A stretch of DNA of 64,000 bases from Octopus sinensis (GCF_006345805.1 NC_043010.1:13392001-13456000), one strand, 5' to 3'. Positions 869 through 19,989 are shown, counted from the first letter of the stretch. Numbers and translations: made by a program. Notes: generated by a model from the sequence alone, not told the origin.

Positions 869-1033
869 TCAAAGCAATTTAGATGCTGCCCCACCTGGTA
901 TTTCTTCATAATGTCTGTTGATTGTGTTCCCTCTAAATTGATGGTCTCTTTTCAATGTTGATGGTGTGGTTATATTTTGACTCTCTTCAACTCCCTTTTC
1001 TTCTCGTATGACTTCAACTTGTGGAATGAAGGC
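869..1033 (-). CDS. Candidate downstream cytoplasmic exon of the protocadherin: AFIPQVEVIREEKGVEESQNITTPSTLKRDHQFRGNTINRHYEEIPGGAASKLL*
   Basis: The acceptor is ttgatattttatag|GCC. The frame is open for 54 codons in phase 0, matching the upstream donor, in non-repetitive sequence with hydrophilic tail-like composition. An internal CAG|GTGGGG (895/894) could instead make it an internal exon. Confidence 0.6.
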   Translation of the reverse strand, partial: AFIPQVEVIREEKGVEESQNITTPSTLKRDHQFRGNTINRHYEEIPGGAASKLL

Positions 1034-1444
1034 CTATAAAATATCAACCATCATTTATTATTAGTATTTGTATTTCAATCCTGATATAAACTGAAATTAA
1101 TTCTTGAAATTTTAAAAACCAATAACACAATATTTTGCACCATTTTTTTTTTTTTTTTTCTTAAAAGAATGTCCCAGAAAATCCCAGCCTGTGTCTTATA
1201 AATTCCATCATTTATGATGACGAGTGTTTGAGTTGATCCAATCAATGGAACAGCATTCTTGTAAAATTAACATACGAGTGGCTGAGCACTCCACAGACAA
1301 GTGTACCCTTAACAGCACTAGTGTAGCTTAGAATGTGTGCTGCCAGGGCAGCCCTTCATGCCTTTCAGCATCGATGAAATAAATACCAGCTGAGCACTGG
1401 GGTCAATATATATTTCTTTACTACCCACAAGGGGCTAAACATAG

Positions 1445-1572
1445 ATATACACACACACACAAACGTACATACATATATATACATACATGCATACATATAT
1501 ATATAAATATAATATATTTATATACATACATACATACATACATATATGTGTATGTATATTATGTATATTTTA

Positions 1573-1604
<32 letters not shown>

Positions 1605-1641
1605 CACACCACACACATATATATTTGTATATAATATAATA

Positions 1642-1694
<53 letters not shown>

Positions 1695-1842
1695 TACATA
1701 CGTACATATATATATGTCTATATGTATATATAAATATATGTATATATATATATATATATATGTGTGTATATATACGAGTGTATATATATATGTGTGTATA
1801 TATATATGTGTGTGTGGTATATATATATATATATATATATAC
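1445..1842. repeat. (TA)n/(CA)n compound microsatellite
   Basis: Direct reading. Confidence 0.95.
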
Positions 1843-2453
1843 ATTTATCAGTCCTGTACTCAGTGAATCTTCCCATGCCACTGGCTTTGTTCTATATATG
1901 AGATGCCATGATATCATTAACTCTATCAGTAGATGAGATGACTAACATGACACCAATAATGCTGGCTTTACTTAGAAGATGAAATGATGGCTTTGTTCAC
2001 TAGATACCATGATATCATTGCTTTACTAAATATACGACATGATATCACAGCCTTCATTCAAATAAATGACATAACATCAGTGGTTTTTATTTAATAGATG
2101 ATATAGTGTTTAGTGGTAGAGCTCAAATACATCAGCTGTAAAAAGACGCAGTATAAGTTTAAATAAATAAATAAAGAAGAAAATAATTAGAAAAACTAGC
2201 AGGAAAATCCTTACCTTACTTGTAGGATAAATATATTACGCATATACTCTCTCTCTTTTACTCTTTTATTAGTTTCAGTCATTTGACTGCGGCCATGCTG
2301 GAGCACCGCCTTTAATCGAGCAACTCGACCCCGGGACTTATTCTTTTCTAAGCCCAGTACTTATTCTATCGGTCTCTTTTGCCGAACCGCTAAGTGACGG
2401 GGACATAAACACACCAGCATCGGTTGTCAAGCAATGCTGGGGAACAAACATAG

Positions 2454-2502
<49 letters not shown>

Positions 2503-2526
2503 CATACAACGGGCTTCTTTCAGTTT

Positions 2527-2860
2527 CATGGCTCAGTGGTTAGAGCGTCGAGCTTACGATCGTGAAGTTGTGAGCTCGAATCCCGGACGGGGCTGCGTGT
2601 TGTGTTCTTGAGCAAGGCACTTTATTTCACGTTGCTCCAGTTCACTCAGCTGTAGAAATGAGTTGCGACGTCACAGGTGCCAAGCTGTATCGGCCCCTTT
2701 GCCTTTCCCTTGGACAACATCGGTGACGTGAAGAGGGGAGGCTGGTATGCATGGGCGACTGCTGGTCTTCCATAAAACAACCTTGCCCAGACTTGTGCCT
2801 CAGAGGGTATCTCTCTAGGTGCAAACCCATGGTCAGTGCCTGACCGAAGGGGGTCTTTTT
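2527..2860 (+). mobile_element. SINE family D; a minus copy at about 29280-29860 is split by SINE B
   Basis: The head is catggctcagtggttagagc...gctcgaatccc and the core is tgtgttcttgagcaaggcactttatttcacgttgctccag. Confidence 0.8.
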
Positions 2861-2892
2861 TTTTTATATATATATATATATGCATGTGTATG

Positions 2893-3750
2893 AACTACCA
2901 TGCTTCATGCCAGGGAAACATAGGCCATGAATACTGAGGACATGCATGTGTAGGCTTGAAAGAAATGAAGCAAGCATGATCTGCTGGATGTTTAATGTCA
3001 GTGTGTATATACGACAGAGTGTAAGTGCCCTGAGAGAAAGGTTGGGCATAAGAAGCATCAAATGTGGTGTGCAAGAGAGGTGGCTGCTCTGGTATGGTCA
3101 TGTGTTACATATGGATGAGGACAGCTGTGTGACAAAGTGCCACTCCCCAACTGTGGAAGGAACCTGTAGAAGAATTAGACCCAGGAAGACATGGGATGAG
3201 GTGGTGAAGCTTGACCTTCGAACATTGGGCATCAGAGAGGCAATGATAGGAGACCAGGGCCTTTGGAGATATGCTGTGATTGAGAAGACCTGGCAACTAA
3301 AGTGAGATCACAGCCACACACATCCAGCCCTGTTAAGAATACTCCTGATGCGTCAGGCAATATGATATGCTTGAGAAGACCTGTTGAGTCAAGTAAAACC
3401 AATATCGTAGCTGGAGCCAGTGCTCCTTGACTGGCTCCTGTGCTGATGGCATGTAAAAAGCACAATCCGAATGTGGTCAATGCCAGGTCTGCCTCACTGG
3501 CTCCGGTGCCGGTGGCACATAAAAAGCACCATCCAAACCTGATCGTTGCCAGGCCCACCTTATTGGCTCCTCTGTCGGTGGCTCATAAAAAGCACCCACT
3601 ACACTTTCAGAGTGGTTGGCATTCGGAAAGGCTGTAGAAACTCTGCCAGACCAGATTGGAGTCTGGTACAACCACTGGCTCTCCAGACCTCAGTCAAACC
3701 GTCCAACCCAAGCCAGCATGGAAAACAGACATTAATCAATGATGATGATT
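2893..3750 (+). mobile_element. Older RTE 3' fragment
   Basis: The translation RLERNEASMICWM...WYGHV...RPRKTW matches the 34-35 kb element. It has a 3' UTR with about 70-bp repeats and a (GAT)n tail. Confidence 0.85.
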
Positions 3751-3751
3751 A

Positions 3752-3818
3752 TGTATGTATGTATGTATGTGTGTGTGTGTGTATGTATATATATATATAT
3801 ATATATATATACACAAAC

Positions 3819-3849
<31 letters not shown>

Positions 3850-3850
3850 C

Positions 3851-3891
<41 letters not shown>

Positions 3892-3893
3892 TT

Positions 3894-3927
<34 letters not shown>

Positions 3928-3937
3928 TTTAGATATT

Positions 3938-3992
<55 letters not shown>

Positions 3993-4029
3993 GTAGATAG
4001 ATAGGTAGATAGATAGGTAGATAGATAGG

Positions 4030-4072
<43 letters not shown>

Positions 4073-4081
4073 GTAGATAGG

Positions 4082-4112
<31 letters not shown>

Positions 4113-4203
4113 GTAGATAGATAGGTAGATAGGTAGATAGATAGATAGATAGATAGGTAGATAGATAGGTAGATAGATAGGTAGATAGGTAGGTAGATGA
4201 TAG
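3752..4203. repeat. Compound microsatellite ending in a (GATA)n/(GGTA) tract of about 350 bp
   Basis: Direct reading. Confidence 0.95.
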
Positions 4204-4434
4204 ATAAGAAACAATGGATAGGTGTCAATTCATTACACCTGTTTCCAATGAATTTTTTAATTGATTAATGAGTATGTAACATCATTATAAAAAATCATTT
4301 TCTTCAGGTGAGTACATGAACCACAATATTAGGAACATTTAAAAACATTTAAAATCCACAATGATATGTGCATTGTTTTGCGATTCCAAGAACTTTGCTG
4401 GTCATAAATACATTTATACTTATATATATATATG

Positions 4435-4477
<43 letters not shown>

Positions 4478-5409
4478 TACTCTTTTACTTGTTGCAGTCA
4501 TTTGACTGCAGCCATGCTGGAGCACCACCTTTAGTCGAGCAAATCGACCCTGGGACTTATTCTTTGTAAGCCCAGTACTTATTCTATCGGTCTCTTTTGC
4601 CAAACCGCTAGGTGACGGGGACGTAAACACACCAGCATCGGTTGTCGAGCAATGCTAGGGGGACAAATACAGACACACAAACACACACACACATACATAT
4701 ATATATACATATATACGACAGGCTTCTTTCAGTTTCCGTCTACCAAATCCACTCACAAGGCATTGGTCGGCCCGAGGCTATAGCAGAAGACACTTGCCCA
4801 AGATGCTACGCAGTGGGACTGAACCCGGAACCATGTCGTTGGTAAGCAAGCTACTTACCACACAGCCACTCCTGCGCCTATTAGTCACATAGAAGTACCT
4901 GTGTGGTGCCATGTCAAAGTGCCAATGTTGTGCCACAATGTACCCATGCATGGTCACATAAAAGTGCCTGTGCACGCACCATGTAAAAGCATCCATGTAG
5001 TGTCACATAAAAGCATGTGTATATGCCATATAAAACCACCCGGCACACTCTGTAATGTGGTTGGCATTAGGAAGGACATCCAGCCATAGAAAAAAATTGT
5101 CAAATCAGAGTGGACTCTGGTGCAGCTTCCCAGCTTATCAGCTCCAGTCAAACCATTTGACTAATGCCAGCATGGACAATGGACACTAAATGATGATGAT
5201 GATGATGATGATATATTATATAGGTGCAGGAGTGGCTGTGTGGTAAGTAGCTTGCTTACCAGCCACATGGTTCCGGGTTCATTCCCACTGCGTGGAAACT
5301 TGGGCAAGTATCTTCTACTGTAGCCTCGGGCCAACCAAAGCCTTGTGAGTGGATTCGGTAGACAGAAACTGAAGGAAGTCCGTCATATATATATATATAT
5401 ATATATATA

Positions 5410-5477
5410 CTTTATTTTAAGCAGCAGAAAATTCAACAAATCAGATTTTGTTGAATTTTCTGCTGCTTAAAATAAAG
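5410..5477. other. Perfect hairpin, 31-bp arms, 6-nt loop
   Basis: ctttattttaagcagcagaaaattcaacaaa / tttgttgaattttctgctgcttaaaataaag. Confidence 0.9.
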
Positions 5478-5807
5478 CATATTACTCTACCACTGGTATT
5501 TGAGTACTCTTTTTTCCACCTTGTTTCACATTTATGTGTTTACTCCGGTATATATATATATATATATATGTATGCGTGTGTGTCTGTATTTGTCCCCTCC
5601 AACATCACTTGACAACCAATGGTGGTGCGTTTACGTCCCCGTAATTTTGTGATTTGGCAAAAGAGACCGATAGAATAAGTACTGGGCTTACAAAGAATAA
5701 CTCCTTGAGTCGATTTACTCAACTAAAGGCAGTGCTCCAGCATGGCTGCAGTCAAATGACTGAAACAAGTAAAAGAGTGTGTGTGTGTGTGTGTGTGTAT
5801 GTGTGTA

Positions 5808-6240
5808 TAGGCTTGTTAAAGAAGGCAACAAACATTAAGGCAAGGCAAACATCTTAAGTCGTATACAATGTTATAATTGGAAAAAGTTCAAAGTCTTACA
5901 GCTGTTTCTGGGATATCCCCGAGTATGGGATATTCCATCATCAGAGACAAATAGAGTTAAAATAGGGAAAATGAGAATGGTATATATTAATGAGATGATG
6001 ACATAGAGGAAGGAAGAGAGTAAAGGAATAAGGAGATGAAGAGAGAGAAGAAAAAAGAAGCATAAAAGTTCATAGTTCAACTTTACAATGTTGTAGAAAC
6101 AAGAGCATAAGTCCTTAGGTTCAATCCTGCATAGATCCATGTGGGTCAAAATCTTGATATAGTAAACATCCAGAGAAAAAAGATGTGAACATATCAATAT
6201 TCAATAACAGAATCCGTCACAGCACTTACCTAGCATACTT
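5808..6240 (-). mobile_element. Short TA-flanked non-coding element carrying the hammerhead (Penelope terminal-repeat-like or retrozyme-like)
   Basis: About 430 bp between TA/TG microsatellites, containing the hammerhead motif and no convincing ORF. Boundaries are approximate. Confidence 0.45.
5893..5948 (-). ncRNA. Type I hammerhead ribozyme motif, core intact
   Basis: The minus strand reads GTCT-CTGATGA-TGGAATATCCC(ATACTCG)GGGATATCCCA-GAA-AC(AGCT)GT-A-AGAC. Helix I is 4 bp, helix II is 10 of 11 bp, helix III has a palindromic loop, and the triplet is GUA. Confidence 0.8.
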
Positions 6241-6452
6241 TATATATATACTCTTTTTACTTGTTTCAGTCATTTGACGGCGGCCATGCTGGAGCACCGC
6301 CTTAATCGAGCAACTCGACCCCGGGACTTATTCTTTTGTAAGCCCAGTACTTATTCTATCGGTCTCTTTTGCCGAACCGCTAAGTAACGAGGACATGAAC
6401 ACACCAGCATCGGTTGTCAAGCAATGCTAGGGGGACAAACACAGACACACAA

Positions 6453-6487
<35 letters not shown>

Positions 6488-6658
6488 CATATATACGACT
6501 GGCTTCTTTCAGTTTCCGTCTACCAAATCCACTCACAAGGCTTTGGTCGGCCCAAGGCTATAGTAGAAGACACTTGCCTAAGGTGACATGAAGTGGGACT
6601 GAACCCGGAACCATGTGGTTGGTAAACAAGCCACTTACCACACAGCCACTCCTGCGCC

Positions 6659-6705
<47 letters not shown>

Positions 6706-6810
6706 TAAAATGAGGATGAGAAATTAGATATTAATTTAATTAACATCGATTTCACACCAGTGGTCTAGCATATAAAAAAACTGAAGGTTCAGTAAAATTG
6801 TATTATATAC

Positions 6811-6983
6811 ATATTAGAGGGAAACCCTTATGTGGACACCCTTATGCTAGAAATAGATCCGCTATGCTCTTACCACTAAGAAATGTTCTCAAGAAAAATT
6901 TATGAGAACATTTCTCAGTGGTAAGACCATAGCGGACCTATTTCTAGCATAAGGGTGTCCACATAGTGGTTTTCCTCTAATAT
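6811..6983. other. Foldback inverted repeat, 81-bp arms, 11-nt loop
   Basis: Arms 6811-6891 and 6903-6983 differ at 6 positions. Confidence 0.9.
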
Positions 6984-6984
6984 G

Positions 6985-7340
6985 TCATCATCATCATCGT
7001 TTAACGTCTGTTGTCCATGCTAGCATGGGTTGGACGGTTCGACCGGGGATCTGGGAAGCCAGAAGGCTGCAAAGGCTCCAGTCTGATCTGGCAGTGTTTC
7101 TACAGCTGGATGCCCTTCCTAACGCCAACCACTCCATGAGTGTAGTGGGTGCTTTTTACGTGCCACCTGCACAGGTGCCAGGCGAGGCTGGCAATGGCCA
7201 CGATCGGTTTGTGCATTTTACGTGCCACCAACATGGAAGCCAGTCGAGGTGGCACTGGCATCAGCCACGATTTGGATGGTGCTTTTTATGTGCCATCGAC
7301 ACGGAAGCCAGTCAAGGCGGTGCTGGCATCGGCCACGATT
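6985..7340 (-). mobile_element. RTE 3' UTR-only copy; similar tails at about 450-683, 4880-5213, 30170-30540, 32755-32855, 37725-37830, 40725-40970, 50595-50900, 62690-62835
   Basis: The copies share taaaaagcacccactacact...gtggttggcgttaggaagggcatccagctgtagaaac...catgctagcatgga...aaatgatgatgat. Confidence 0.8.
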
Positions 7341-7365
7341 CGGATAGCACTTTTTACAGATATAT

Positions 7366-7423
<58 letters not shown>

Positions 7424-8173
7424 CCCCATACTTATATATATATATATATGGTTCATACACAGAATATGGCTGATATATGTATAATAAAATGGTACATACA
7501 TTGGTGGACATATGGTATGTAAGTGCATTATTTATACTTGGGACATAGTTTACATACAGCTTATGGCTAGCACATATATAAGACTTATATATGGTATACT
7601 GATTGATAAATGGTATCTGGGTAATATATAGAATCAGTCTGACAATACAATACTGTGGTTGGCTCTAGAACACAACTGTTGTAAAATGTGTGACACATAA
7701 AGCATGAAGAACATAGAGTGCACACGGTGAAATGCTGAACATGTTTGATATAAAGAAAATACGTTTGATATATAGATCAACATATTTGGTACATAGAACA
7801 TTTGTCTGATATACAGAACACGGCGAGCTGGCAGAAACGTTAGCATGCCGGGTGAAATACTTAGCGGTATTTTGTCTGTTTTTGCATTCTGAGTTCAAAT
7901 TCCGTCATGGTCGACTTTGTCTTTCATCCTTTCAGGGTCAATAAATTAAGTACCAGTTACGCACTGGGGCTGATGTAATCAACTTAATCCCTTTGTCTGT
8001 CCTTGTTTGTCCTCTCTGTGTTTAGCTCCTTGTAGGTAGTAAAGAAATAGGTATTTCGTCTTATATACAGAACATTTGTCTAACATACAGTTCTATATTT
8101 AAGAGATGAGGAATTATGCACATTATTTACATTATTTACATTTGAAGGATATTTGTCCTCATCTTGTTTGTTC

Positions 8174-8218
8174 TTAACACGTTTCAGCTGATATACTCTC
8201 CAGCCTTCATCAGGTGTC
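8174..8218 (-). pseudogene. Decayed hammerhead in an inverted copy of the family H element (about 8095-8240)
   Basis: The sequence matches the 8815-8950 copy and CTGATGA is intact, but a small deletion after GAAACGT removes the cleavage triplet and the helix I 3' strand. Confidence 0.55.
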
Positions 8219-8852
8219 TTGGGGAAATTTCAAACCTGGCATAGTGGCTAAGAGCACGGGCTACTAACCCTACGATTCCAAGTTCGATTCCAGGCAGTGA
8301 TCTGAATAGCAATAATAATATAAGTGTAGGAGTGGCTGTGTGGTAAGTAGCTTGCCTACCAGCCACATGGTTCTGAGTTCAGTCCTACTGCATAGCACCT
8401 TGGGCAAGTGTCTTCTACTATAGCCTCAGGCCAACCAAAGCCTTGTGAGTGGATTTGGTAGACGGAAACTAAAAGAAGCCCGTCATATATATGTATGTGT
8501 ATGTATATATATATGTGTGTGTGTGTGTGTGTGGTGTGTGTGTGTGGTGTGTGTGTGTGTGCGCATTTGTGTTTGTATGTTTGTGTGTCTGTGTTTGTCC
8601 CCCCCTCCAACATCGCTTGACAACCAATGCTGGTGTGTTTACATCCCCATAACTTAGTGGTTCAGCAAAAGAGACTGATAGAATAAGCACTAGGCTTACA
8701 AAGAATAAGTCCTGGGGTTGATCTGCTCGACTAAAGGTGGTGCTCCAGCATGGCCACGGTCAAATGACTGAAACAAGTAAAAAAGTAAAGAGTATAGTAA
8801 CAACATTGAAAAATACCTTAGGAATGAGAACCCAGGTTCGAAATTTCCCCAA

Positions 8853-8898
8853 GACACCTGATGATGGCTGGAGGGTATATCAGCCGAAACGTTGTGTT
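8853..8898 (+). ncRNA. Minimal type I hammerhead motif (family H element)
   Basis: GACAC-CTGATGA-T-GGCTG(10 nt)CAGCC-GAA-ACGT-T-GTGTT. Helix III is reduced to the palindrome ACGT and the triplet is GUU. Confidence 0.6.
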
Positions 8899-9979
8899 AA
8901 CAACAAACAAGATGAGACAAATATCCATCAAATGTAAATAATGTAAATAATTTGTCTAACATAGAATATTTGTCTCAAATACAGAGCATATGTCTGACTT
9001 GTATGTTTGACAGACATCTGATATACAGAACAAGTGTTTTATATATGTAACAAGTACCTGAAATATGGAGTATATCTGACATGCTTTAATGATGATGAAT
9101 TGGTGGTTTTATATTCTGGGATTGTAGGGAGGCGGTGAGCTGGCAGAAGCGTTAGCACGCCGGGCGAAATGCTTAGCGGTATTTCGTCTGTTGTTACATT
9201 CTGAGTTCAAATTCCGCCGAGGTCAACTTTGCCTTTCATCCTCTCGGGGTCGATAAATAAAGTACCAGTTTCGCACTGGGTCGATGTAATCGACTTAATC
9301 CCTTTGTCCGTCCTTGTTTGTCCCCTCTATGCCCCTTGTGGGCAATAAAGAAATATATATTCTAGGATTGTAGGGCGGTGAGCAGGCAGAAACTTTAGCA
9401 CCCTGTACAAAGTGCTTAGCAGTATTCCGCCTGCCGCTATGTTCTGAGTTCAAATTCTGCTGAGGTCGACTTTGCCTTTCATTTTTTCGGGGTCAATAAT
9501 TTAAGTACCAGTTGTGTACTGGCTCAATCAAATCAACTGGGCCCCTCCCCCCAAATTACAAGCCTTGTGCCTATTGTAGAAATGGTTATATATTGGGATT
9601 ATGGTGGTGATGGTGATGGTGATGATGGTTGTGGCGTACACTTCAGTAAAGGTGGTGGTGATAGAGGTGAGGTTTATACTTTAGCAATATTATTGTCTGA
9701 GGTGGTTGTGGTTGAAGTTGTTTAACCCTAGTCAAGCTCTGGTGGAGCAGGCCTATGATCAAAGCAAGGTATTCCATTCATGATTAGCCTATCTTCTCTC
9801 AAGCACATGTTTATCTAGGAATATCATCCAATGTGTTCAGCTCTCTCTCTCTCTATTTCTCTATCTCTCTCTCCCTCACTCTCTCTTTCTCTCTCTTTTC
9901 CAAGACAATTGCTTGTAGGGTGTCATTTGGGGGCGTTTTGGCTACTATTTCTATGCACCAGTTATAGTGATGGTATAGT

Positions 9980-10362
9980 GATGAAATGCTTAGCGGTATT
10001 TCGTCTGCCGTTACGTTCTGAGTTCAAATTCCAGCGAGGTCAACTTTGCCTTTCATCCTTTCGGGGTTGATTAAACAAGTACCAGTTGCACACTGGGGTC
10101 GATATAATCGACTTAATCCTTTTGTCTGTCCTTGTTTGTCCTCTCTGCGTTTAGCCCCTTGTGGGTAGCAAAGAAATAGGTATTTCCTTTGCTGCTATGT
10201 TCTGAGTTCAAATTACGCCGAGGTCGACTTTGCCTTTCATCCTTTCGGGGTCGATTAAATAAGTACCAGTTGCGCACTGGGGTCGATATAATCAACTTAA
10301 TCCGTTTGTCTGTCCTTGTTTGTCCTCTCTGTGTTTAGCCCCTTGTGGGTAGTAAACAAATA
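9980..10362 (+). repeat. SINE B tandem dimer
   Basis: Two units are joined at aagaaataggtatttc. Confidence 0.8.
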
Positions 10363-10860
10363 GGTATACATGTGTGTGTGTGTGTACAAGTATGTGTTAT
10401 GCATTAGTGATAATGTTCTAAGTAGTCAATGTTATACTTTAATGGTATTAGTGGTGGCTGTGATGGTGATGGTAGTGGTGGGGGAAAGGTATGTTTATAG
10501 GTTAGTAGTGATGCTAATTGTGGTGGTGGTGGTGGTGGTGGTGATGTTAATCATAGAGGTGGTGGTATACATGTAGTATAACGTCGGAAATATTTTAGTT
10601 TTTATTGATGAAGGAGATCCTGTATAGTTTTAGGATGCAAATGTTGGTGTTCATGATGGTGGTATTGTTGTTGTTGTTGGTGGTGGTGGTGGTGGTGGTG
10701 GTGGTGGTGGTGGTGGTACTGCTGCTGTTGCTGCTGGGATGATGGTTGCAGTTGAACTAACTAAACAAATGAAATTATTTAGGATGTCATTCATACAAAA
10801 AACATTTATTGAATGAAACAAAAAACAAGAAGAAACGAAAAAAAAACAAAAAAACAAGAC

Positions 10861-10904
<44 letters not shown>

Positions 10905-11214
10905 TCAGTTTCTTTTGGAATTTTTTTTTTGTTTTTCATCAAACATTTATTCAAACATTCATTCAAGTTATTTCATCAGTCAAAAAAAAGTAACAAAATA
11001 AATAAATAAATAAAAAGCCTTCAATTAAGCATTCAACTGGCCACCATTCATCGAATCCAACGTTTATTTAGTCAAATCTTTTGAGTCAAACATTCATTCA
11101 GTCAACTTTTCAATCATACAATCAGTTAAATGTTCATTCATTAGTCACTTAAATCGCTGTTGTTTTTGTTCTTTAATATGACTGATGTATTTGATTATTT
11201 CTTGCCAAAACCCC

Positions 11215-11574
11215 CACCATACACACACACACACACACACATGCACGCACATACACATGCACGCACATACATATGCACGCGCATACACACTGTCAGCAAA
11301 AACACGCACCTACCCTTACGTGTGCATTCTTTTGCTCTTATGCACAGACACAGATATTGCAGCAACTCACACATGCACAAATACACATATACACACATAA
11401 CATACATACATACATGCACACACACACACACATACATACATGCACACACACACACACACATACATACATGCACACACACACAAACACACACACATACATA
11501 CATGCACACACACACACACACAAACACACACACATACATACATGCACACACACACACATACACACATACATACA

Positions 11575-11610
<36 letters not shown>

Positions 11611-11822
11611 ATACGCCTTGCATTGCATCTTTCCGTACATTAGATATTCATTCACAAACACAAGCTTTATAGTACATGCATACACTTACACACACACATG
11701 CACACACGTGCACACACACACACCACACACACACGCACCAAAGGCAAATGCAAAACTCCGCCATCAATTCTACCAAATACTACCACCTACTATTCCACTT
11801 GTCTACACGCATACACACGCAT

Positions 11823-11853
<31 letters not shown>

Positions 11854-12016
11854 ACACACACACACACATGCATGTGCTTCATAAATGAAAATTTACTATT
11901 GCACTTACACACATGTAAACACACAGACACACACACATGCACGCAAGCACACATACATTCTTGTTCAGCCACCATAACCTGTATTCAACTCGCACGCTCC
12001 TGCTAAACGTACACGT

Positions 12017-12057
<41 letters not shown>

Positions 12058-13260
12058 ATTCCTTACTGATGAGCTCCCCCTTCATTCAAGCTGCACACGC
12101 GCACACACACACAAACACACGTACATGCATACGTACAGATGTGCTCACGCAAATACATGCGCATGCACACACACACACACGCACACACACATATACATGT
12201 ACATGTACAGATGCGCTCATGCAAATACACACACGCAATTGTATATACACACGCATGCATGCATGCATACATACAAATGTGCAAATACAAACACACACAC
12301 ATACACACACTACTCTGCTCTTCAATATCAAGCTACTATTCAACACATGAACACACACACACACACATAAACAGAAACACACATGCACGTACATGCACGC
12401 ACACACATGTACATGCAACCGTAGTCAGTAACACTAGTACCATTCTACCCACACACACACACACACACATTACCCTAGTCACCAATATCATCAGAACCAT
12501 TCCACAAAACACATGCACACACACACACACATATGCACACATGCATGCATACATGCACACACACACACACATGCACTCACATACACATGCACACAGACGT
12601 ATACACAGAAATACATACATACATGTACACACTCACACACATGCATGCGCATGCCCTCATACACATACATGCACACACGTGCATGCATACACACATACAT
12701 AGATACACACACACACGCGCATGCATACACATACATACATACACACATGCGTACACATACACATACATGCACACATACTCAGAAATACACACACTCACGT
12801 ACACACAGGCACACACACATTTATGCACGCGCAGGCAAACACACACACAGGCACACACACAGACTCACATACGCACAGGCACACACACACTTATGCACGC
12901 GCAGGCAAACACACACACACACACTCATGTACGCACAGGCACACGCACACACTTATGCACGCACAGGCAAACACACACACACACTCACGTACGCACACAC
13001 ACACACACACTTATGCACGCGCAGGCAAACACACACACACACATACACACACACGTACGCACAGGCACACACACACACTTATGCACGCGCAGGCAAACAC
13101 ACACACAACACACACACGCACACATACACTTCCCTAGTCATCAATATCACAACTACCATTCCACATGCCTCCACTCCCCCCCCGCCGCCGCACATCATAC
13201 ACACACACACACACAATCCATCCACCACCACCACCATCACCACCACCACCACCACCATTA
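11215..13260. repeat. About 2-kb compound (CA)n microsatellite with a 50-60-bp sub-unit near 12800-13110
   Basis: Direct reading; sub-unit acgcacaggcacacacacacttatgcacgcgcaggcaaacacacac. Confidence 0.9.
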
Positions 13261-13504
13261 ACCCCTCCTCGCTGCCCCAACCTCAACCATGTTCTTCTCT
13301 CCTGCTCCAGAATGTGAGGCAGAGTTTTTACAGTATTATTCAAGGGACTGTCATCAGCGAAGACAGCTCTCAGTGCTGATTGGAATTTCACAGATAGAAT
13401 TATCAAGAACAATGCAAGGGAGAAACCCTGCCAGAGCCAATGCTGCTTGCTTCGACCCAATTTCAAAGACTGCTGCTTTTCCATAGATCAGCCATCCCCT
13501 GTGC

Positions 13505-14188
13505 ATTCAAATGGTGGTGATGGTGGGGGGGGTGGTGGTGGTGGTGGTGGTGGCGGCGGCGGTGGTGGTGGTGGTGGTGGTGGCAGTGGCGGCGGTGGTG
13601 GTAGTGGCGGTGGTGGTGGCGGCGGTGGTGGTGGTGGCGGTGGTGGTGGCAGTGGTGGTGGTGGTGGTGGCAGTGGTGGTAGTGGCGGTGGTGGTGGTGG
13701 CGGCGGTGATGGTAGTGGCGGTGGCGGTGGTGGGGTGGTGGTGGTGGTGGTGGTGGTGGTGGTGGTGGTGGTGGTGATGGCGATGGTGGTGGTGGTGGCG
13801 GCGGCGGCGGTAGTGGCGGTAGTAGTGGTGGTGGCAGTGGTGGCGGTGGTGGTGGCGGTGGTGGTGGCGGTGGTGGTGGTGGTGGTGGCATTGGTAGTGA
13901 AGGTGGCGGCAGCAGTGAAGATGGTGGAGGAGGTGGTGGTGGTAGTTGTAGTAGTAGTTTCTGTTGCTGCTGCTCTTGTTGCTGCTGCTGTTGTAGGCTC
14001 AGCGAGAAGAGGAAGGAGAAGAAGAGGAAGGAGAAGAAGAGGAAGGAGAAGAGGAAGGAGAAGAAGAAGAAGAGGAAGAAGAAAACCATAGTTCATTGTA
14101 CTAATAGCAGCAGATATGCTGTACTGGGATATTGAGTGGATGTGTTGAAAGCAGCAGCAGTAGTAGTAGCAGCAGCAGCAGCAGCAAC

Positions 14189-14225
<37 letters not shown>

Positions 14226-14422
14226 ATTTCGGGTTGCAATATAATGTTATATCAATAATACTAGTAGTCGATACACTAGTAGCATGAATGGGGACGGGAG
14301 GGCTACAGTGATGGTGGTTGTGGTGGGAGGGGAAGGCAGGTGTTGGCGGTGGGGGGTGGGGTATTGGGAGGAAGGGGGTGGTGGAGGTGGGTGACAGCAA
14401 TGACAACAATGACTACGACAAC

Positions 14423-14454
<32 letters not shown>

Positions 14455-14814
14455 CCACAATGATGATGAGGTGGTGGTGATGGTGGTGGTGGTGCAGTGT
14501 GGTTGGTAGTTGTAACAGTGGTAGAGAAGGTAGTAGTGGTGGTGGTGGTGGTAGTGGCAGCGGCAACAGTAGTAGTAGTAGTATAGTAGTAGTAGTAGTA
14601 GTATAGTAGTAGTAGTAATTTCGGGTTGCAATATAATGTTATATCAATAATACTAGTAGTCGATACACTAGTAGCATGAATGGGGACGGGAGGGCTACAG
14701 TGATGGTGGTTGTGGTGGGAGGGGAAGGCAGGTGTTGGCGGTGGGGGGTGGGGTATTGGGAGGAAGGGGGTGGTGGAGGTGGGTGACAGCAATGACAACA
14801 ATGACTACGACAAC

Positions 14815-14846
<32 letters not shown>

Positions 14847-15053
14847 CCACAATGATGATGAGGGTGGTGGTGATGGTGGTGGTGGTGCAGTGTGGTTGGT
14901 AGTTGTAACAGTGGTAGAGAAGGTAGTGGTGGTGGTGGTGGTGGTAGTGGCAGCGGCAACAGTAGTAGTAATAGTAGTAGTAGTAGTAGTAGTAATAGTA
15001 GCAGCAGCAGCTACTGTGGTAAATAGAGTAGCAGCATCACCAATGCTAATAAC

Positions 15054-15091
<38 letters not shown>

Positions 15092-15136
15092 TGGTAGTGG
15101 TAGTAGTAGTAGTAGTAGTAGCAGTAGTAGTAGTCA

Positions 15137-15169
<33 letters not shown>

Positions 15170-15600
15170 TATCAACAGCAGCAGCTGCTGCAGCAACTAC
15201 AAGGGTTGCACCATCAACACTACCACCACCACCAACAACAACAACAACAACAGCTGCAGCAGCGACAGCAGCAACAGCAACAATAGTAGTAGAAGCACAA
15301 GAACTAACAATACCATCCACACATCAACAGCATCGACAAGAAACACCATCAACGCCGGCAACAGCTGCAGCAGCAGCAATACTATTGTCACTACAATCAG
15401 CAGCACCACCTTCATCGATAACAGCAGCAGTAACAACAACGCAACCACCAGTAGCAGTAGCAGCACAATATATCGCCATCGAAAACACCATTACCATCAT
15501 CATCATCATCATCACCATTATCATCACCATCACCATCATTATCATCATCATCATCATCACCATCATCGTCATCACCATCATCGTTTCTAACAACAGCAAC
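13505..15600. repeat. Compound trinucleotide tract (GGT, AGA, TAG, CAG, CAT)
   Basis: Direct reading. Confidence 0.9.
14222..14985. repeat. Near-perfect direct duplication, 392-bp period
   Basis: aatttcgggttgcaat... starts at 14225 and again at 14617. Confidence 0.9.
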
Positions 15601-16699
15601 ACCTTCGACGCCATCGCCTTCAACGTTTGCAAGGACGTAAGCACCAGTAGGATAACAATATCGAACAAGACGACCACAACCACCATTGTCGTCTTCTTCC
15701 TTGATAACATCACCAGCATCACAACGAAGACCTGACAACACCACGCACGGCACAACAAGCTAGTAGCACAACAAAACTGCCACGACACCGCCACCGACAA
15801 TTTCGCTAATAACAACAACAACAACAACAACACTGGTTAGGGAACAGCAGCATCAATGCCATCGCCACATCCCGCCAACGGTACTACGTCCTGTAGCGCA
15901 ATAATGATTGACAACAAACGCTGCCGCCAACACTAGTAACGCAACAATATCATCACAAACGTTTACTACCACCTTTATCAATAACAACACATGACCAGAC
16001 CACCAGTAATGCTACAACATCGACATCAATAACAACATCAACAGCAATGCCACAATCTGTTGTATGACAATATGTCCAACAATAACACCTCTACTTTCAT
16101 CAGTAATGATAACATAACCACTAACAACACAGTCGTATAAACATCAGTAACAACACAATGTCTGATATCACAATAATGTCGACATATACATCATTTGCTA
16201 TCTAAACCAATAACAACACAGGCATCAGAAACATAACAATATGTCCAGCAATAACGCCACCGTCTTCACCAACAATGCAAAAATATCAACACAAATATGA
16301 TTGTCATTGACAACAACAATACCTATTTCTTTGCTACCCACAAGGGGCCAAACACAGAGGGGACAAACAAGGACAGACATAGTATTAAGTCGATTACATC
16401 GACCCCATTGTGTAACTGGTATTTAATTTATCGACCCTGAAAGGAAGAAAAGCAAAGTCGACCTCGGCGGAATTTGAACTCACAACGTGACGGCTGACAA
16501 AATACTGCTAGGTGTTTCGCTTGGCATGCTAACGTTTCTGCCAGCACACAACCACTAGTAATATAGTAATATAAACGTCAACATATCTGATATCAGCGCC
16601 ATTAGTTGCATGACAACATCAACAGTAACAACAACACTTTGTCAATAACAACAACATGACCCCTAATAATGCAACAATATCAAAGTCAGCAACATAACA

Positions 16700-19690
16700 A
16701 TCACCAATAACAAGATGGCCCCTAATAATACAGCAATATTGACATCAACACCATTGCCACCTTCACCAAAATCAAAAACAATATGACCCCCCCCAATCAC
16801 CAATAATGTAACAATATCAAAATCAGCACCACCACCCCACTCACCTTCTCCAATAACAACAACTCGACCCCTAAATATATGACAATATCAACATCAACAC
16901 CATTGCCATCTATACCAATATCAAAAACAATATGATCCCCCCATCGCCAATAATGTAACAATATCAAAATCAGCACCACCACCACCACCTTCTCCAATAA
17001 CAACAACGTGACCCCTAAAGATATGACAATATCGACATCAACACCATTGCCACTTTCACCAATATCAAAAACAATATGACACCACCCCCATCACCAATAA
17101 TGAAACAATATCAAAACAGCACCACCACCACCATCTTCTCCAATAACAACAACATGACCCCTAAAGATATGACCCCCTAAGATATGAGAATATTGACATC
17201 AACCCCATTGCCACCTTCACCAATATCGAAAACAATATGACCCCACCCTCATCACCAATAATGTAACAATATCGAAATCGACACCACCACCACCTTCTCC
17301 AATAACAACAACATGACCCCTAAAGATATGACAATATTGACATCAACACCATTGCCACCTTCACCAATATCAAAAACAATATGACCCCCCCCCATCACCA
17401 ATAATGTAACAATATCAAAATCACCACCACCACCACCATCACCTTCTCCAATAACAACATGACCCCTAAAGATATGACAATATCGACATCAACACCATTG
17501 CCACCTTCACCAATATCAACAACAATATGACCCCCCCATCACCAATAATGTAACAATATCAAATTCAGCACCACCACCACCACCACCTTCTCCAATAACA
17601 ACAACATGACCCCTAAAGATATGACAATATTGACATCAACACCATCGCCATCTTCACCAATATCAAAAACAATATGACCCCACTGCCATCACCAATAATG
17701 TAACAATATCAAATTCAGCACCACCACCACCACCACCTTCTCCAATAACAACAACATGACCCCTAAAGATATGACAATATTGACATCAACACCATTGCCA
17801 CCTTCACCAATATCAAAAACAATATGACCCCACCCACCTCATCACCAATAATGTAACAATATCAAAATCAGCACCACCACCACCACCTTCTCCAATAACA
17901 ACAACATGACCCCTAAAGATATGACAATATTGACATCAACACCATTGCCACCTTCACCAATATCAAAAACAATATGACCCCCACCTCATCACCAATAATG
18001 TAACAATATCAAAATCAGCACCACCACCACCACCTTCTCCAATAACAACAACATGACCCCTAAAGATATGACAATATTGACATCAACACCATTGCCACCT
18101 TCACCAATATCAAAAACAATATGACCCCCCCACCATCACCAATAATGTAACAATATCAAAATCAGCACCACCACCACCACCTTCTCCATAACAACAACAT
18201 GACCCCTAAAGATATGACAATATTGACATCACACCATTGTCACCTTCTCCAATATCAAAAACAATATGACCCCACCTCATCATCACCAATAATGTACAAT
18301 ATCAAAATCACACCACCACCACCATCACCTTCTCCAATAACAACACGTGACCCCTAAAGATATGACAATATCGACATCAACCCCATTGCCACCTTCACCA
18401 ATAAAAAACAATATGACCCCCCCATCACCAATATGTAACAATATCAAAATCAGCACACACCATCACATCACCTTCTCCAATAACAACAACGTGACCCCTA
18501 AAGATATGACAATATCGACATCAACCCCATTGCCACCTTCACCAATATCAAAAACAATATGACCCCCCCCCCCTCACCAATAATGAACAATATCAAAATC
18601 AGCACCCAACACCATCACCTTCTCCAATAACCAACGTGACCCCTAAAGATATGACAATATCACATCAACACCATTGCCACTTTCACCAATATCAAAAACA
18701 ATATGACACCACCCCCATCACCAATAATGAACAATATCAAAACAGCAACCACCAACCTTCTCCAATAACAACAACGTGACCCATAAAGATATGACAATAT
18801 CGACATCAACACCATTGCCAACTTTCACCATATCCAAAAAAATATGACCCCCCCCATCACCAATAATGAAACAATATCAAAACAGCACCACCACCACCAT
18901 CTTCTCCAGAACAACAACAAACCCCAACATATGACCCCTAAAGATATGACAATATTGACATCAACCCCATTGCCACCTTCACCATATCAAAAACAATATG
19001 ACCCCCACCCCATCACCAATAATGTAACAATCGAAATCGAACCCACCCCCACCACCTTCTCCAATAACAACAACGTGACCCCTAAAGATATGACAATATC
19101 GACATCAACCCCATTGCCACCTTCACCAATATCAAAAACAATATGACCCCCCCCATCACCAATAATGAAACAATATCAAAATCAGCACCACCACCACCAT
19201 CACCTTCTCCAATAACAACAACGTGACCCCTAAAGATATGACAATATCGACATCAACCCCATTGCCACCTTCACCAATATCAAAAACAATATGACCCCCC
19301 CCATCACCAATAATGTAACAATATTAAAATCAGCACCACCACCACCATCACCTTCTCCAATAACAACAACGTGACCCCTAAAGATATGACAATATCGACA
19401 TCAACCCCATTGCCACCTTCACCAATATCAAAAACAATATGACCCCCCCCCCATCACCAATAATGTAACAATATCAAAATCAGCACCACCACCACTCACC
19501 TTCTCCAATAACAACAACGTGACCCCTAAAGATATGACCCCTAAAGATATGACAATATCGACATCAACACCATTGCCACCTTCACCAATATTAACAACAA
19601 TATGACCCCCCCCCAATAACGCAACAGTATCGAAATCAACACCACCACCACCTTCTCCAATAGCAACAATGTGATCCCTAATAACACAAC
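16700..19690. repeat. About 147-bp C/A-rich minisatellite, about 20 units
   Basis: The unit atgacccctaaagatatgacaatattgacatcaacaccattgccaccttcaccaatatcaaaaacaat + atgaccccccccatcaccaataatgtaacaatatcaaaatcagcaccaccaccaccaccttctccaataacaacaac recurs from about 16716 to 19520. Confidence 0.95.
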
Positions 19691-19989
19691 AATATGTCCA
19701 TCAAAGACAATATCACTATTAGTTGCACAACAATACCGACATCAACAACATTATTCACCTTCACCAATTTATAGCATAACAACCACAAGGTATATGAACC
19801 ATAGTATGTCCACCGACAACAAACCCCATCTTCACCAATAACAACAACGACAATGACGACATGTCGGGCCCTCACCCACCCCCAATAACGAAACAATATC
19901 AACACCACCACTGCCGCCACCACCACCACATTCGTAACCAATACCATTGCCACCACCCTCCCCACTACCACCCTACCATCAAAAATCGC

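What the first reader, a model, noticed from the sequence alone, without database searches (positions are those of the whole stretch)
5893..5948. Intact hammerhead ribozyme on the sense strand of a putative protocadherin intron
Seen: every core nucleotide of a type I hammerhead is present on the minus strand (CUGAUGA, GAAA, GUA triplet). Helix I is GUCU/AGAC, helix II is 10 of 11 bp, and helix III is AC/GU closed by a palindromic AGCU loop. Predicted cleavage is between 5897 and 5896. Established: minimal type I hammerheads with short palindromic helix III occur in Penelope-like element termini and metazoan retrozymes, and often act as dimers. Inference: if 1033-869 is a protocadherin exon, this motif is transcribed in the pre-mRNA about 4.9 kb upstream of that acceptor. 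It could then cut the nascent transcript and affect use of the distal exon.
Basis: partly seen in the sequence, partly recalled or inferred. Interest (0 to 1): 0.8.

Follow-up and report, generated by a model that had tools for sequence, protein, structure and literature searches.

The report
Transposon-type hammerhead motif in protocadherin intron
A complete hammerhead self-cleaving RNA motif lies on the sense strand of a 54-kb octopus protocadherin intron, but it looks like one solitary, species-specific copy of an abundant transposon-borne motif rather than a host gene regulator.

Summary
Window 5948-5893(-) carries every hammerhead core nucleotide and helices I (4 bp), II (10/11 bp) and III (AC/GU + AGCU). 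Cleavage is predicted between 5897 and 5896. A descriptor built from published features expects about 1e-4 such hits per window. The context also holds: an O. bimaculoides protocadherin maps to 57568-55193(-) and 1033-896(-), so the motif is sense-strand intronic, 4.86 kb upstream of the acceptor.

The regulatory reading is not supported.
- No Rfam hammerhead model matches it.
- The orthologous O. bimaculoides intron lacks the motif and about 2.2 kb around it. Homology breaks at a microsatellite.
- Its 3' half (GAAACAGCUGUAAG) recurs at four other O. bimaculoides loci in 316 kb, twice as inverted pairs. One pair aligns across the whole ribozyme with a mutated core.
- A second minimal-hammerhead repeat family and a decayed Penelope-like element lie in the same intron.
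- The active monomer fold is 5.5 kcal/mol above the MFE. The 8-nt palindrome ACAGCUGU favours a double-hammerhead dimer, and no partner copy exists in the window.

Verdict: a new member of the known metazoan PLE/retrozyme-type minimal type I hammerheads, probably a weak or dimer-dependent cleaver. Cleavage itself is untested.

The parts
5893..5948 (-). Complete type I hammerhead motif (56 nt)
   Evidence: Direct reading. Only strict descriptor hit in the window.
5945..5948 (-). Helix I, 5' strand (GUCU)
   Evidence: Pairs with AGAC at 5896-5893. It does not extend when flanks are added.
5938..5944 (-). Core C3-A9 (CUGAUGA)
5909..5937 (-). Helix II (10 of 11 bp, U10.1-A11.1 at its base, one A.C mismatch) with a 7-nt loop
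   Evidence: O. bimaculoides relatives have G-C where the candidate has A.C, and a helix 8 nt shorter.
5906..5908 (-). Core G12-A13-A14
5898..5905 (-). Helix III plus loop 3: ACAGCUGU, a perfect 8-nt palindrome (A15.1...U16.1)
   Evidence: It forms an intermolecular 8-bp helix in the cofold MFE.
5896..5897 (-). Predicted scissile bond between A17 (5897) and A1.1 (5896)
   Evidence: Core numbering applied to the sequence. Inferred, not assayed.
5893..5896 (-). Helix I, 3' strand (AGAC)
5813..6001 (-). About 190-nt single-copy segment carrying the motif. It has no counterpart in the O. bimaculoides ortholog and is bounded by (TA)n and (CA)n microsatellite.
   Evidence: alignment A1.
1034..55192 (-). 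Intron 1 of the protocadherin gene (about 54 kb), which contains the motif in sense orientation
   Evidence: tblastn of P0001. Donor ccg|gtaagt. Acceptor ttttatag|GCC.
55193..57568 (-). Protocadherin exon 1 (cadherin repeats, transmembrane segment, part of the tail)
   Evidence: Pfam Cadherin E = 9e-76. 94% identity to P0001 residues 1-792.
896..1033 (-). Protocadherin exon 2 (read-through to a stop codon would end at 869)
   Evidence: P0001 residues 793-838, 98% identity. Sequence.

Best explanation
The motif is a structurally intact, solitary copy of a transposon-borne minimal type I hammerhead. This is the kind carried by Penelope-like elements and their non-autonomous derivatives, the retrozymes. 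It sits in a roughly 190-nt segment at a microsatellite in intron 1 of a protocadherin gene, and that segment is present in this species and absent from the O. bimaculoides ortholog.

Shown:
- the sequence and its helices;
- its intronic, sense-strand position;
- its absence from the ortholog;
- recurrence of its 3' half, and of one full-length decayed relative, elsewhere in O. bimaculoides;
- a second minimal-hammerhead repeat family and a Penelope-like ORF remnant in the same intron.

Inferred:
- The RNA would be part of the pre-mRNA.
- As a monomer it mostly adopts an inactive fold, in which C3-U4-G5 pairs with C-A-G of helix III.
- The catalytically competent form is a double hammerhead. 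In it, the palindrome ACAGCUGU of two copies forms an 8-bp helix III, and each helix I forms between the two molecules.
- With no second copy in the transcript, cleavage of the pre-mRNA should be rare or slow. The motif therefore has no host function. It is a by-product of transposon activity.
For: Motif and significance.
-.

Architecture matches the published descriptions.
- Published features are a short helix I (4-5 bp), a long helix II and a palindromic 15.2-16.2 with loop 3. Single motifs were reported inactive and dimers weakly active (PMC4209133).
- Invertebrate retrozyme hammerheads have a 2-bp helix III plus tetraloop (PMC7229834).

Gene context.
-.

Absence from the ortholog.
- Window 6238-6011 matches L001 35509-35738 at 93.5%.
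- The next colinear match is window 3843, matching L001 35762.
- There is no N gap in L001 between these points and no hit to the motif anywhere in L001.

Family evidence.
- GAAACAGCTGTAAG occurs 7 times in 380 kb, against about 0.01 expected for a 13-mer. Besides the candidate, the copies are two inverted head-to-head pairs and two solo copies in O. bimaculoides.
- The L002 pair aligns over the whole hammerhead and no further. It carries CCGAUGA and CCAAUGA cores.

Other hammerhead-bearing repeats nearby.
- A family 'gacacCUGAUGAnGGCUG..CAGCCGAAACGUUguguu' has 10 copies in 380 kb, three of them in this window.
- A Penelope-like ORF remnant (RT plus GIY-YIG) lies at 40656-39345(-) in the same intron.

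Energetics.
- Active monomer fold -11.3 kcal/mol against monomer MFE -16.8, an occupancy of about 5e-5.
- Double-hammerhead fold -38.5, against dimer MFE -40.9 and two monomers at -33.6.
Against: - No Penelope-like ORF or pLTR adjoins this copy. The nearest ORF remnant is 33 kb away, and its 3' region shows no significant similarity to the candidate segment.
- An Argonauta Penelope-like copy fetched for comparison showed no hammerhead after its ORF.
- The homology to the O. bimaculoides copies is short: nhmmer E = 0.4-0.7 over 63 nt. Four of the six other 14-mer copies have no recognisable 5' half.
- Insertion in this lineage cannot be told from deletion or assembly collapse in O. bimaculoides without an outgroup.
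- A mollusc (mussel) hammerhead lacking the classical loop contacts still cleaves as a monomer at about 0.1 per min (PMC7229834), so monomer activity here cannot be excluded.
- Genome-wide copy number could not be measured. It rests on 380 kb, mostly from one O. bimaculoides chromosome.
Confidence: 0.68

Rival explanations
1. Host-regulatory intronic ribozyme. The motif self-cleaves in the nascent protocadherin pre-mRNA before the acceptor 4.86 kb downstream is made. This lowers use of the distal exon 2 in favour of a read-through or truncated isoform, as proposed for the CPEB3 intronic ribozyme.
For: - Sense-strand intronic position, and a real distal exon.
- Exon 1 can also read through 12 codons to a stop, so an alternative 3' end is conceivable.
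- The core is intact, while its O. bimaculoides relatives are mutated.
- Precedent: the Cpeb3 HDV-like ribozyme has a half-life of 2-3 min and lies 9.9 kb before the next exon. Inhibiting it raises CPEB3 protein (PMC10919898).
Against: - Absent from the orthologous intron in O. bimaculoides.
- It is a member of a dispersed repeat at roughly one copy per 50-80 kb in the sample, so a 54-kb intron should hold one by chance.
- No loop 1-loop 2 contacts, a 4-bp helix I, and U-A at 10.1-11.1.
- The active monomer fold is disfavoured by 5.5 kcal/mol, and there is no partner copy for a dimer.
- Single minimal PLE hammerheads showed no detectable cleavage (PMC4209133).
- Slow hammerheads in introns did not impair splicing (PMC2995048).
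- In vertebrates, retrozymes are depleted from introns (bioRxiv 10.64898/2026.07.22.740005).
Confidence: 0.05
2. Chance look-alike. The hairpin, the CUGAUGA and GAAA strings and the short flanking complementarity arose by chance in AT-rich intronic DNA, or next to a repeat motif conserved for reasons unrelated to ribozymes. On this reading it never was a ribozyme.
For: - No Rfam hammerhead hit.
- The core pattern alone is common: 0.9 expected per window.
- A generic descriptor would give on the order of 100-400 chance hits in a 2.7-Gb genome (extrapolated).
- Most copies of the GAAACAGCUGUAAG motif lack a recognisable 5' half.
Against: - With published family features required, the expectation falls to 1.3e-4 per window, and to 6e-6 with helix II >=10.
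- The independent O. bimaculoides pair shares the 5' half as well (UCUC-CGAUGA-A-GGGAUAU...), so the whole layout is ancestral to a repeat subfamily.
- The 8-nt palindrome and the short-helix-I, long-helix-II design are the published signature of PLE-type hammerheads.
Confidence: 0.07
3. Part of a still-active non-autonomous element (retrozyme-like). The roughly 165-190-nt segment is a monomer of a small hammerhead-bearing retroelement that recently inserted into the microsatellite. The ribozyme works for the element, processing multimeric transcripts into units and circles, and not for the host.
For: - The segment size is at the low end of metazoan retrozyme monomers (170-400 nt) (PMC7229834).
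- The core is intact and the locus is lineage-specific.
- The boundaries are microsatellite, and Penelope-like elements show an insertion bias for microsatellites (PMC8557442).
- The Argonauta Penelope-like copy abuts a (GATA)n tract.
Against: - No tandem copies are present. The segment is single-copy in the window and in all fetched loci.
- Its flanks are not shared with the O. bimaculoides relatives.
- No expression data are available.
Confidence: 0.15

Closest known systems
Minimal and atypical type I hammerheads of Penelope-like elements (Cervera & de la Pena 2014, PMC4209133)
   Same: - Short helix I (4 bp), long helix II, and a palindromic 15.x-16.x with loop 3.
- No loop-loop tertiary contacts, and predicted to act as a double hammerhead.
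- Dispersed multi-copy relatives arranged as inverted head-to-head pairs.
- Not detected by standard models.
   Different: - This copy is not inside a pLTR next to an RT/GIY-YIG ORF.
- It keeps a 2-bp helix III plus tetraloop, where the barest forms have a bare palindrome.
- The nucleotide after A9 can pair with an extra A before G12. This gives U10.1-A11.1 in place of an unpaired base plus G10.1-C11.1.
Metazoan non-LTR retrozymes (Cervera & de la Pena 2020, PMC7229834)
   Same: - Type I hammerhead with a 2-bp helix III capped by a palindromic tetraloop, described as typical of invertebrate copies.
- AT-rich unit of about 170-400 nt.
- Present in molluscs (mussel).
   Different: - Retrozymes are tandem arrays, and here there is one copy.
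- Canonical retrozyme hammerheads have a 6-bp helix I with loop 1.
- No circular RNA evidence is available.
Conserved intronic hammerheads of amniotes (HH9/HH10; RECK, CTCL, DTNB introns; reviewed in PMC6155905)
   Same: A type I hammerhead on the sense strand of an intron of a protein-coding gene.
   Different: - Those are canonical, with tertiary contacts, and are conserved at orthologous positions across classes.
- This one is minimal and is missing from the nearest ortholog.
- It is not matched by the Rfam HH9/HH10 models.
CPEB3 intronic HDV-like ribozyme (PMC10919898)
   Different: - A different ribozyme class.
- Conserved across mammals, with measured activity (half-life 2-3 min).
- Nothing comparable is shown here.

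Membership tests
Hammerhead ribozyme, type I | Conserved core C3 U4 G5 A6 N7 G8 A9 ... G12 A13 A14 | tested here: met
   CUGAUGA at 5944-5938 and GAA at 5908-5906 on the minus strand.
Hammerhead ribozyme, type I | A15.1-U16.1 pair followed by a non-G at position 17 (NUH cleavage triplet) | tested here: met
   A at 5905 pairs with U at 5898. The triplet is GUA, with A17 at 5897.
Hammerhead ribozyme, type I | Three helices around the core, with helix I open | tested here: met
   Helix I is 4 bp, helix II is 10/11 bp and helix III is 2-3 bp. The structure evaluates to -11.3 kcal/mol but is not the MFE.
Hammerhead ribozyme, type I | G10.1-C11.1 base pair | tested here: not met
   The pair at the base of helix II is U-A. 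PMC4209133 lists G10.1-C11.1 as highly conserved.
Hammerhead ribozyme, type I | Loop 1-loop 2 tertiary contacts of full-length natural hammerheads | tested here: not met
   Helix I is 4 bp with no extension or loop 1, even with 40-nt flanks.
Hammerhead ribozyme, type I | Score at or above the gathering threshold of an Rfam hammerhead model | tested here: not met
   No hammerhead family is listed at gathering score or at E<=10 on 651 nt and 72 nt. The same whole-window scan also missed the intact minimal hammerhead at 8853-8898, so the models appear blind to this class.
Hammerhead ribozyme, type I | Site-specific self-cleavage | not testable with these tools
   This needs in vitro transcription or RNA-end mapping.
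PLE-associated minimal hammerhead (Cervera & de la Pena 2014) | Short helix I (4-5 bp) and enlarged helix II (6-8 bp or more) | tested here: met
   4 bp and 10/11 bp. Published features.
PLE-associated minimal hammerhead (Cervera & de la Pena 2014) | [quoted passage not shown] | tested here: met
   ACAGCUGU is a perfect palindrome. The intermolecular 8-bp helix appears in the cofold MFE, and the double-hammerhead fold is -38.5 kcal/mol against -33.6 for two monomers.
PLE-associated minimal hammerhead (Cervera & de la Pena 2014) | Unpaired nucleotide between A9 and 10.1 | tested here: inconclusive
   A U follows A9, but an extra A precedes G12 and can pair with it. The relatives have A/G at these two positions.
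PLE-associated minimal hammerhead (Cervera & de la Pena 2014) | Located in the pLTR of an element encoding RT plus GIY-YIG | tested here: not met
   No ORF adjoins the motif. The flanks are orthologous unique DNA and SINEs. The nearest Penelope-like ORF remnant is at 40656-39345(-), and its 3' region is not similar.
PLE-associated minimal hammerhead (Cervera & de la Pena 2014) | Many related copies in the genome, forming families with compensatory changes | tested here: inconclusive
   The 3' half recurs 7 times in 380 kb, and one independent full-length relative was found. That is too few copies for covariation, and no whole genome was available.
Metazoan non-LTR retrozyme | Tandem repeats of 170-400 bp, each with a type I hammerhead | tested here: not met
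   Single copy. There is no second copy of the segment or of the 14-mer in the window.
Metazoan non-LTR retrozyme | Expressed as small linear and circular RNAs | not testable with these tools
   No transcript data.
Conserved intronic hammerheads (HH9/HH10 type) | Conserved at the orthologous intron position across species | tested here: not met
   Absent from the O. bimaculoides ortholog L001.

The most novel reading that the evidence does not exclude
A recently inserted transposon hammerhead has been co-opted, in this octopus lineage only. On this reading it cuts nascent protocadherin pre-mRNA 4.9 kb before the distal exon. Nearby nascent transcripts at the gene might supply the second copy for the dimer. 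The cut would shift the balance between the exon 2-containing isoform and a read-through isoform in neurons. This would be a young, species-specific ribozyme switch in the expanded cephalopod protocadherin family.
Probability: 0.04. Interest if true: 0.75.

Novelty: new member of a known kind. Interest (0 to 1): 0.3.

Why it matters
If the main reading is right, the finding is ordinary. Transposon-borne minimal hammerheads are already known to be very abundant in metazoan genomes, and a solitary copy in a long, repeat-rich intron is expected.

Two modest points remain.
- My searches of the held library found no paper describing hammerhead motifs in cephalopods.
- At least two distinct hammerhead-bearing repeat families appear to be common in octopus DNA. 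In the 316-kb O. bimaculoides sample they occur at roughly one copy per 50-80 kb, including inside protocadherin introns.

This matters for anyone annotating cephalopod repeats, or asking whether such motifs ever influence the heavily expanded protocadherin loci. It also shows that the Rfam models miss this class.

Tried and rejected
1. Rfam hammerhead models. Whole window at gathering score, then 651 nt and 72 nt at E<=10. No hammerhead hit.

2. Conservation at the orthologous site. I fetched the O. bimaculoides gene (L001). The motif and about 2.2 kb around it are missing there.

3. More family copies from other O. bimaculoides loci.
- Twelve look-ups gave seven O. bimaculoides loci (L001-L007, about 316 kb non-N) and one Argonauta locus (L025).
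- Two look-ups failed because the genes exceed 100 kb, and two proteins were not on record.
- No second intact copy of the candidate's family was found.

4. Linking the motif to the Penelope-like remnant in the same intron.
- The string GGAAATGGCTGTAAAT, about 125 nt after that ORF's stop, looked similar. It has 4 mismatches in 16.
- The two regions show no significant alignment (score 16 against a null mean of 17). I rejected this link.

5. An intact cephalopod Penelope-like 3' end (Argonauta, L025). The ORF runs straight into (GATA/GACA)n and no hammerhead was found.

6. GIY-YIG motif scan of six-frame translations of the window and the O. bimaculoides loci held at that point. Nothing was found. 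The window's own remnant is frameshifted at that motif.

7. Public metagenome and viral collections scanned for CTGATGA-N10-40-GAAACAGCTGTAAG. There were 17 metagenome hits, none with helices I and II, and 0 viral hits. These are chance matches.

8. ARAGORN found no tRNA genes in the window.

9. A covariance model of the family was considered and dropped. Only two independent sequences span the full motif.

Full report
THE OBSERVATION

On the minus strand, window 5948..5893 reads GUCU CUGAUGA UGGAAUAUCCC AUACUCG GGGAUAUCCCA GAA ACAGCUGU A AGAC.
- The 5' core CUGAUGA lies at 5944-5938.
- G12-A13-A14 lie at 5908-5906.
- The A15.1-U16.1 pair is present and the cleavage triplet is GUA, with A17 at 5897. 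The scissile bond therefore falls between 5897 and 5896.
- Helix I is GUCU/AGAC.
- Helix II has 10 Watson-Crick pairs of 11, with one A.C mismatch.
- Helix III is AC/GU closed by AGCU. The eight nucleotides ACAGCUGU form a perfect palindrome.

Four things weaken it as a ribozyme.
- The pair at the base of helix II is U-A, not the nearly universal G10.1-C11.1.
- Helix I is only 4 bp, does not extend into the flanks, and has no loop 1.
- The predicted minimum-energy fold (-16.8 kcal/mol) pairs C3-U4-G5 with C-A-G of helix III, not the hammerhead fold (-11.3 kcal/mol).
- No Rfam hammerhead model reports it, at gathering score on the whole window or at E<=10 on 651-nt and 72-nt slices.

IS IT MORE THAN CHANCE?

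The bare core pattern is common: 3 hits against 0.9 expected per window. A generic type I descriptor (helix I >=4, II >=3, III >=2, free loops, G-U allowed) expects 0.003-0.009 hits per 64-kb window over 400 dinucleotide shuffles. The candidate is the only real hit.

I then used a descriptor built from the published features of metazoan type I and PLE hammerheads: helix I >=4, helix II >=6 with at most one mismatch, helix III a 4-10-nt palindrome, and H17. This expects 1.3e-4 per window, or about 5 per 2.7-Gb genome. Requiring helix II >=10 lowers it to 6e-6 per window. The motif is therefore not a random look-alike. That conclusion does not need the repeat-family evidence below, which supports it independently.

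GENE CONTEXT

The 814-codon ORF at 55154-57598(-) has five cadherin domains. It is 94% identical to O. bimaculoides 'protocadherin beta-4 isoform X1' (P0001, 842 aa).

tblastn places P0001 residues 1-792 on 57568-55193(-) and residues 793-838 on 1033-896(-) at 98% identity. The donor ccg|gtaagt is at 55193/55192 and the acceptor ttttatag|GCC is at 1034/1033.

1033-896 is exon 2, intron 1 is about 54 kb, and the motif lies in it on the sense strand, 4.86 kb upstream of the acceptor. That the intron is transcribed through follows from the gene model and has not been observed directly.

THE ORTHOLOGOUS LOCUS

The O. bimaculoides gene with flanks was fetched as L001 (47 kb). Unique intronic DNA is colinear at 88-93.5% identity.
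- Upstream of the motif, window 6238-6011 matches L001 35509-35738 at 93.5%.
- Homology stops at about window 6002, which is 53 nt before the motif.
- The next colinear match is window 3843 to L001 35762, at about 84%.
- About 2.2 kb of the window has no counterpart: the motif segment plus SINE copies and microsatellites. L001 has no N gap there.
- In alignment A1 both species carry (TA)n...(CA)n microsatellite at the break. The window has an extra 165-190 nt between them that holds the motif.

The motif occurs nowhere in L001. Either a short element inserted into the microsatellite in the window's lineage, or O. bimaculoides lost the sequence or its assembly collapsed there. Without an outgroup I cannot decide. 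In either case the motif is not conserved at this intron position in the closest relative available.

A REPEAT FAMILY

I fetched six more O. bimaculoides loci, giving 380 kb non-N in total with the window.

The roughly 190-nt segment as a whole is single-copy. The motif's 3' half, GAAACAGCTGTAAG, is not. It occurs seven times in all:
- the candidate;
- an inverted head-to-head pair at L001 406(-)/530(+);
- an inverted pair at L002 14274(-)/14613(+);
- solo copies at L002 58721(-) and L002 4086(-).

About 0.01 occurrences would be expected by chance.

The L002 pair aligns with the candidate from helix I to helix I and no further (nhmmer candidate positions 53-115, E = 0.4-0.7; alignment A2). 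Candidate and relative read UCUC-UGAUGA-U-GGAAUAU...AUAUCCCA-GAAACAGCUGUAAGA against UCUC-CGAUGA-A-GGGAUAU...AUAUCAUG-GAAACAGCUGUAAGA. The relatives have lost U4 of the core, have a helix II 8 nt shorter, and have G-C where the candidate has its A.C mismatch.

The whole hammerhead layout is therefore ancestral to a dispersed repeat subfamily, and the candidate is its only intact member in the sample. The other four copies have no recognisable 5' half.

OTHER HAMMERHEAD-BEARING REPEATS IN THE SAME INTRON

A relaxed scan found a second family, gacac-CUGAUGA-n-GGCUGG...CAGCC-GAA-ACGU-U-guguu. It matches the published PLE 'min-HHR' point by point (PMC4209133):
- helix III is reduced to a bare 4-nt palindrome;
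- an unpaired base follows A9;
- the G10.1-C11.1 pair is present;
- helix I is 5 bp and helix II is 6-7 bp.

It has 10 copies in 380 kb with well-conserved flanks.
- Three are in the window: 8853-8898(+), which is intact; 8176-8213(-), which has lost a T; and about 54800-54845(+), which has a mutated core.
- The 8.2-8.9-kb pair is head-to-head, is conserved in L001, and is split in the window by a SINE.
- Only about 4 of the 10 copies keep an intact core, so the family is decaying.

Also, window 40656-39345(-) is a frameshifted Penelope-like ORF. It has the RT motif RYLDDCF, a Cys-rich linker and the GIY-YIG motif NLVYVLTCSGC...YIGQT. Its 486 database relatives carry RVT_1, GIY-YIG and PF26215. 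Penelope-like elements have therefore been active in this very intron.

I could not tie the candidate to that copy, because its 3' region is not significantly similar. An Argonauta Penelope-like copy fetched for comparison runs from its stop codon straight into (GATA/GACA)n, with no hammerhead.

HOW IT MOST LIKELY WORKS

The design is a short helix I, a long helix II and a palindromic helix III. Cervera and de la Pena describe this design as selected to act as a dimer. In their assays single PLE motifs gave no detectable cleavage, and dimers gave low cleavage.

The energetics agree.
- The active monomer fold is 5.5 kcal/mol above the MFE, an occupancy of about 5e-5.
- A double hammerhead evaluates to -38.5 kcal/mol. 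In it, the two palindromes form an 8-bp helix III and each helix I forms between the two molecules.
- That compares with -33.6 for two separate monomers and -40.9 for the dimer MFE, which also contains the 8-bp intermolecular helix.
- The ensemble dimerisation free energy of about -7 kcal/mol implies a micromolar Kd.
- There is no second copy in the 64-kb window to serve as partner.

One caution applies. Invertebrate retrozyme hammerheads with a 2-bp helix III plus tetraloop cleave well as monomers. A mussel hammerhead lacking the classical loop contacts still reaches about 0.1 per min. Some monomer activity therefore cannot be excluded.

For the host gene, published work reports that a hammerhead cutting an intron co-transcriptionally left splicing intact, while a fast HDV ribozyme blocked it (PMC2995048, citing Dye 2006 and the Bentley laboratory). 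The one good precedent for regulation, the Cpeb3 ribozyme, has a half-life of 2-3 min and is conserved (PMC10919898).

Here the polymerase needs roughly 1-2.5 min to reach the acceptor. This assumes the usual 2-4 kb per min and is my estimate. Only a rate well above that expected for a minimal, solitary motif could matter.

COMPARISON AND VERDICT

The motif works like, and most resembles, the PLE and retrozyme class of metazoan type I hammerheads.
- It meets the core, helix and palindrome criteria.
- It fails the G10.1-C11.1, tertiary-contact and Rfam-score criteria of canonical hammerheads.
- It is not inside a pLTR or a tandem array.
- It is not conserved, unlike the amniote intronic hammerheads.

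In the sample, copies of the candidate's family occur about once per 50-80 kb, and the second family is at least as dense. A 54-kb intron is therefore expected to contain such a motif, in either orientation. Its presence in a protocadherin intron is not evidence of function.

I rate it a new member of a known kind.

The held literature has nothing on cephalopod hammerheads. The existence of two abundant hammerhead-bearing repeat families in octopus is a small descriptive addition.

Noticed in passing
window 8853-8898(+), 8176-8213(-), about 54800-54845(+); L001 33405-33448(-), 33613-33658(+), about 7730-7780(-); L004 7333-7378(+); L007 about 5190-5235(+), about 4910-4950(-): A second, abundant repeat carries a PLE-style minimal hammerhead: gacacCUGAUGAnGGCUG..CAGCCGAAACGUUguguu. 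Helix III is the bare palindrome ACGU. The flanks are conserved (taggaatgagaacccaggttcgaaatttcccc... upstream). It often occurs as head-to-head inverted pairs. Only about 4 of 10 copies keep an intact core. The 8.2-8.9-kb pair is shared with O. bimaculoides and is split by a SINE in the window.
   Followed up: partly
window 39345-40656(-): A frameshifted Penelope-like element ORF remnant lies in the same intron, on the sense strand. It has the RT motif RYLDDCF, a Cys-rich linker and the GIY-YIG motif NLVYVLTCSGC..YIGQT. Its 486 relatives carry RVT_1, GIY-YIG and PF26215 domains. The closest are 60-62% identical (ENA contigs and Argonauta hians).
   Followed up: partly
window 33929-35011(+): An ORF with the end of a reverse transcriptase (YADDLALIA), followed by a PHD/C1-like zinc finger. 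It is a different retroelement fragment. The family was not identified.
   Followed up: no
window 16700-19700: A tandem array of about 20 units of 144-150 bp, rich in ACC/ATC. Units are 60-97% alike.
   Followed up: no
window 10400-15800: Several kb of trinucleotide and low-complexity repeats (GGT, GTA, CAG, CA/TG runs). These produce long spurious ORFs on both strands.
   Followed up: no
window 2276-2341(+), 4495-4560(+), 21836-21901(+), 31828-31893(+), 44142-44207(+), 49646-49581(-): SINE copies translate to QSFDCGHAGAPPLVEQIDPGTY. This matches residues 946-970 of an annotated O. bimaculoides protocadherin isoform among the hits. An annotated isoform therefore seems to contain a SINE-derived exon.
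   Followed up: no
window 869-1033(-): Exon 2 has two possible ends. The O. bimaculoides isoform X1 splices at 896|895 (cag|gtgggg) to an exon outside the window that encodes DLPT. Read-through would instead add GGAASKLL and stop at 871-869.
   Followed up: partly
L002 14120-14670: In intron 1 of another O. bimaculoides protocadherin gene, a roughly 90-nt direct repeat is followed once by the decayed hammerhead arm in inverted orientation and once in forward orientation. This is a complex duplicated and inverted insertion of the candidate's family.
   Followed up: partly
L025 3890-7800: The Argonauta hians Penelope-like copy has an inverted duplicate of part of its ORF upstream (3890(+) and 6857(-) are identical). 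Its stop codon is followed directly by more than 600 bp of (GATA/GACA)n. This is consistent with microsatellite-targeted, inverted-pair insertion.
   Followed up: partly
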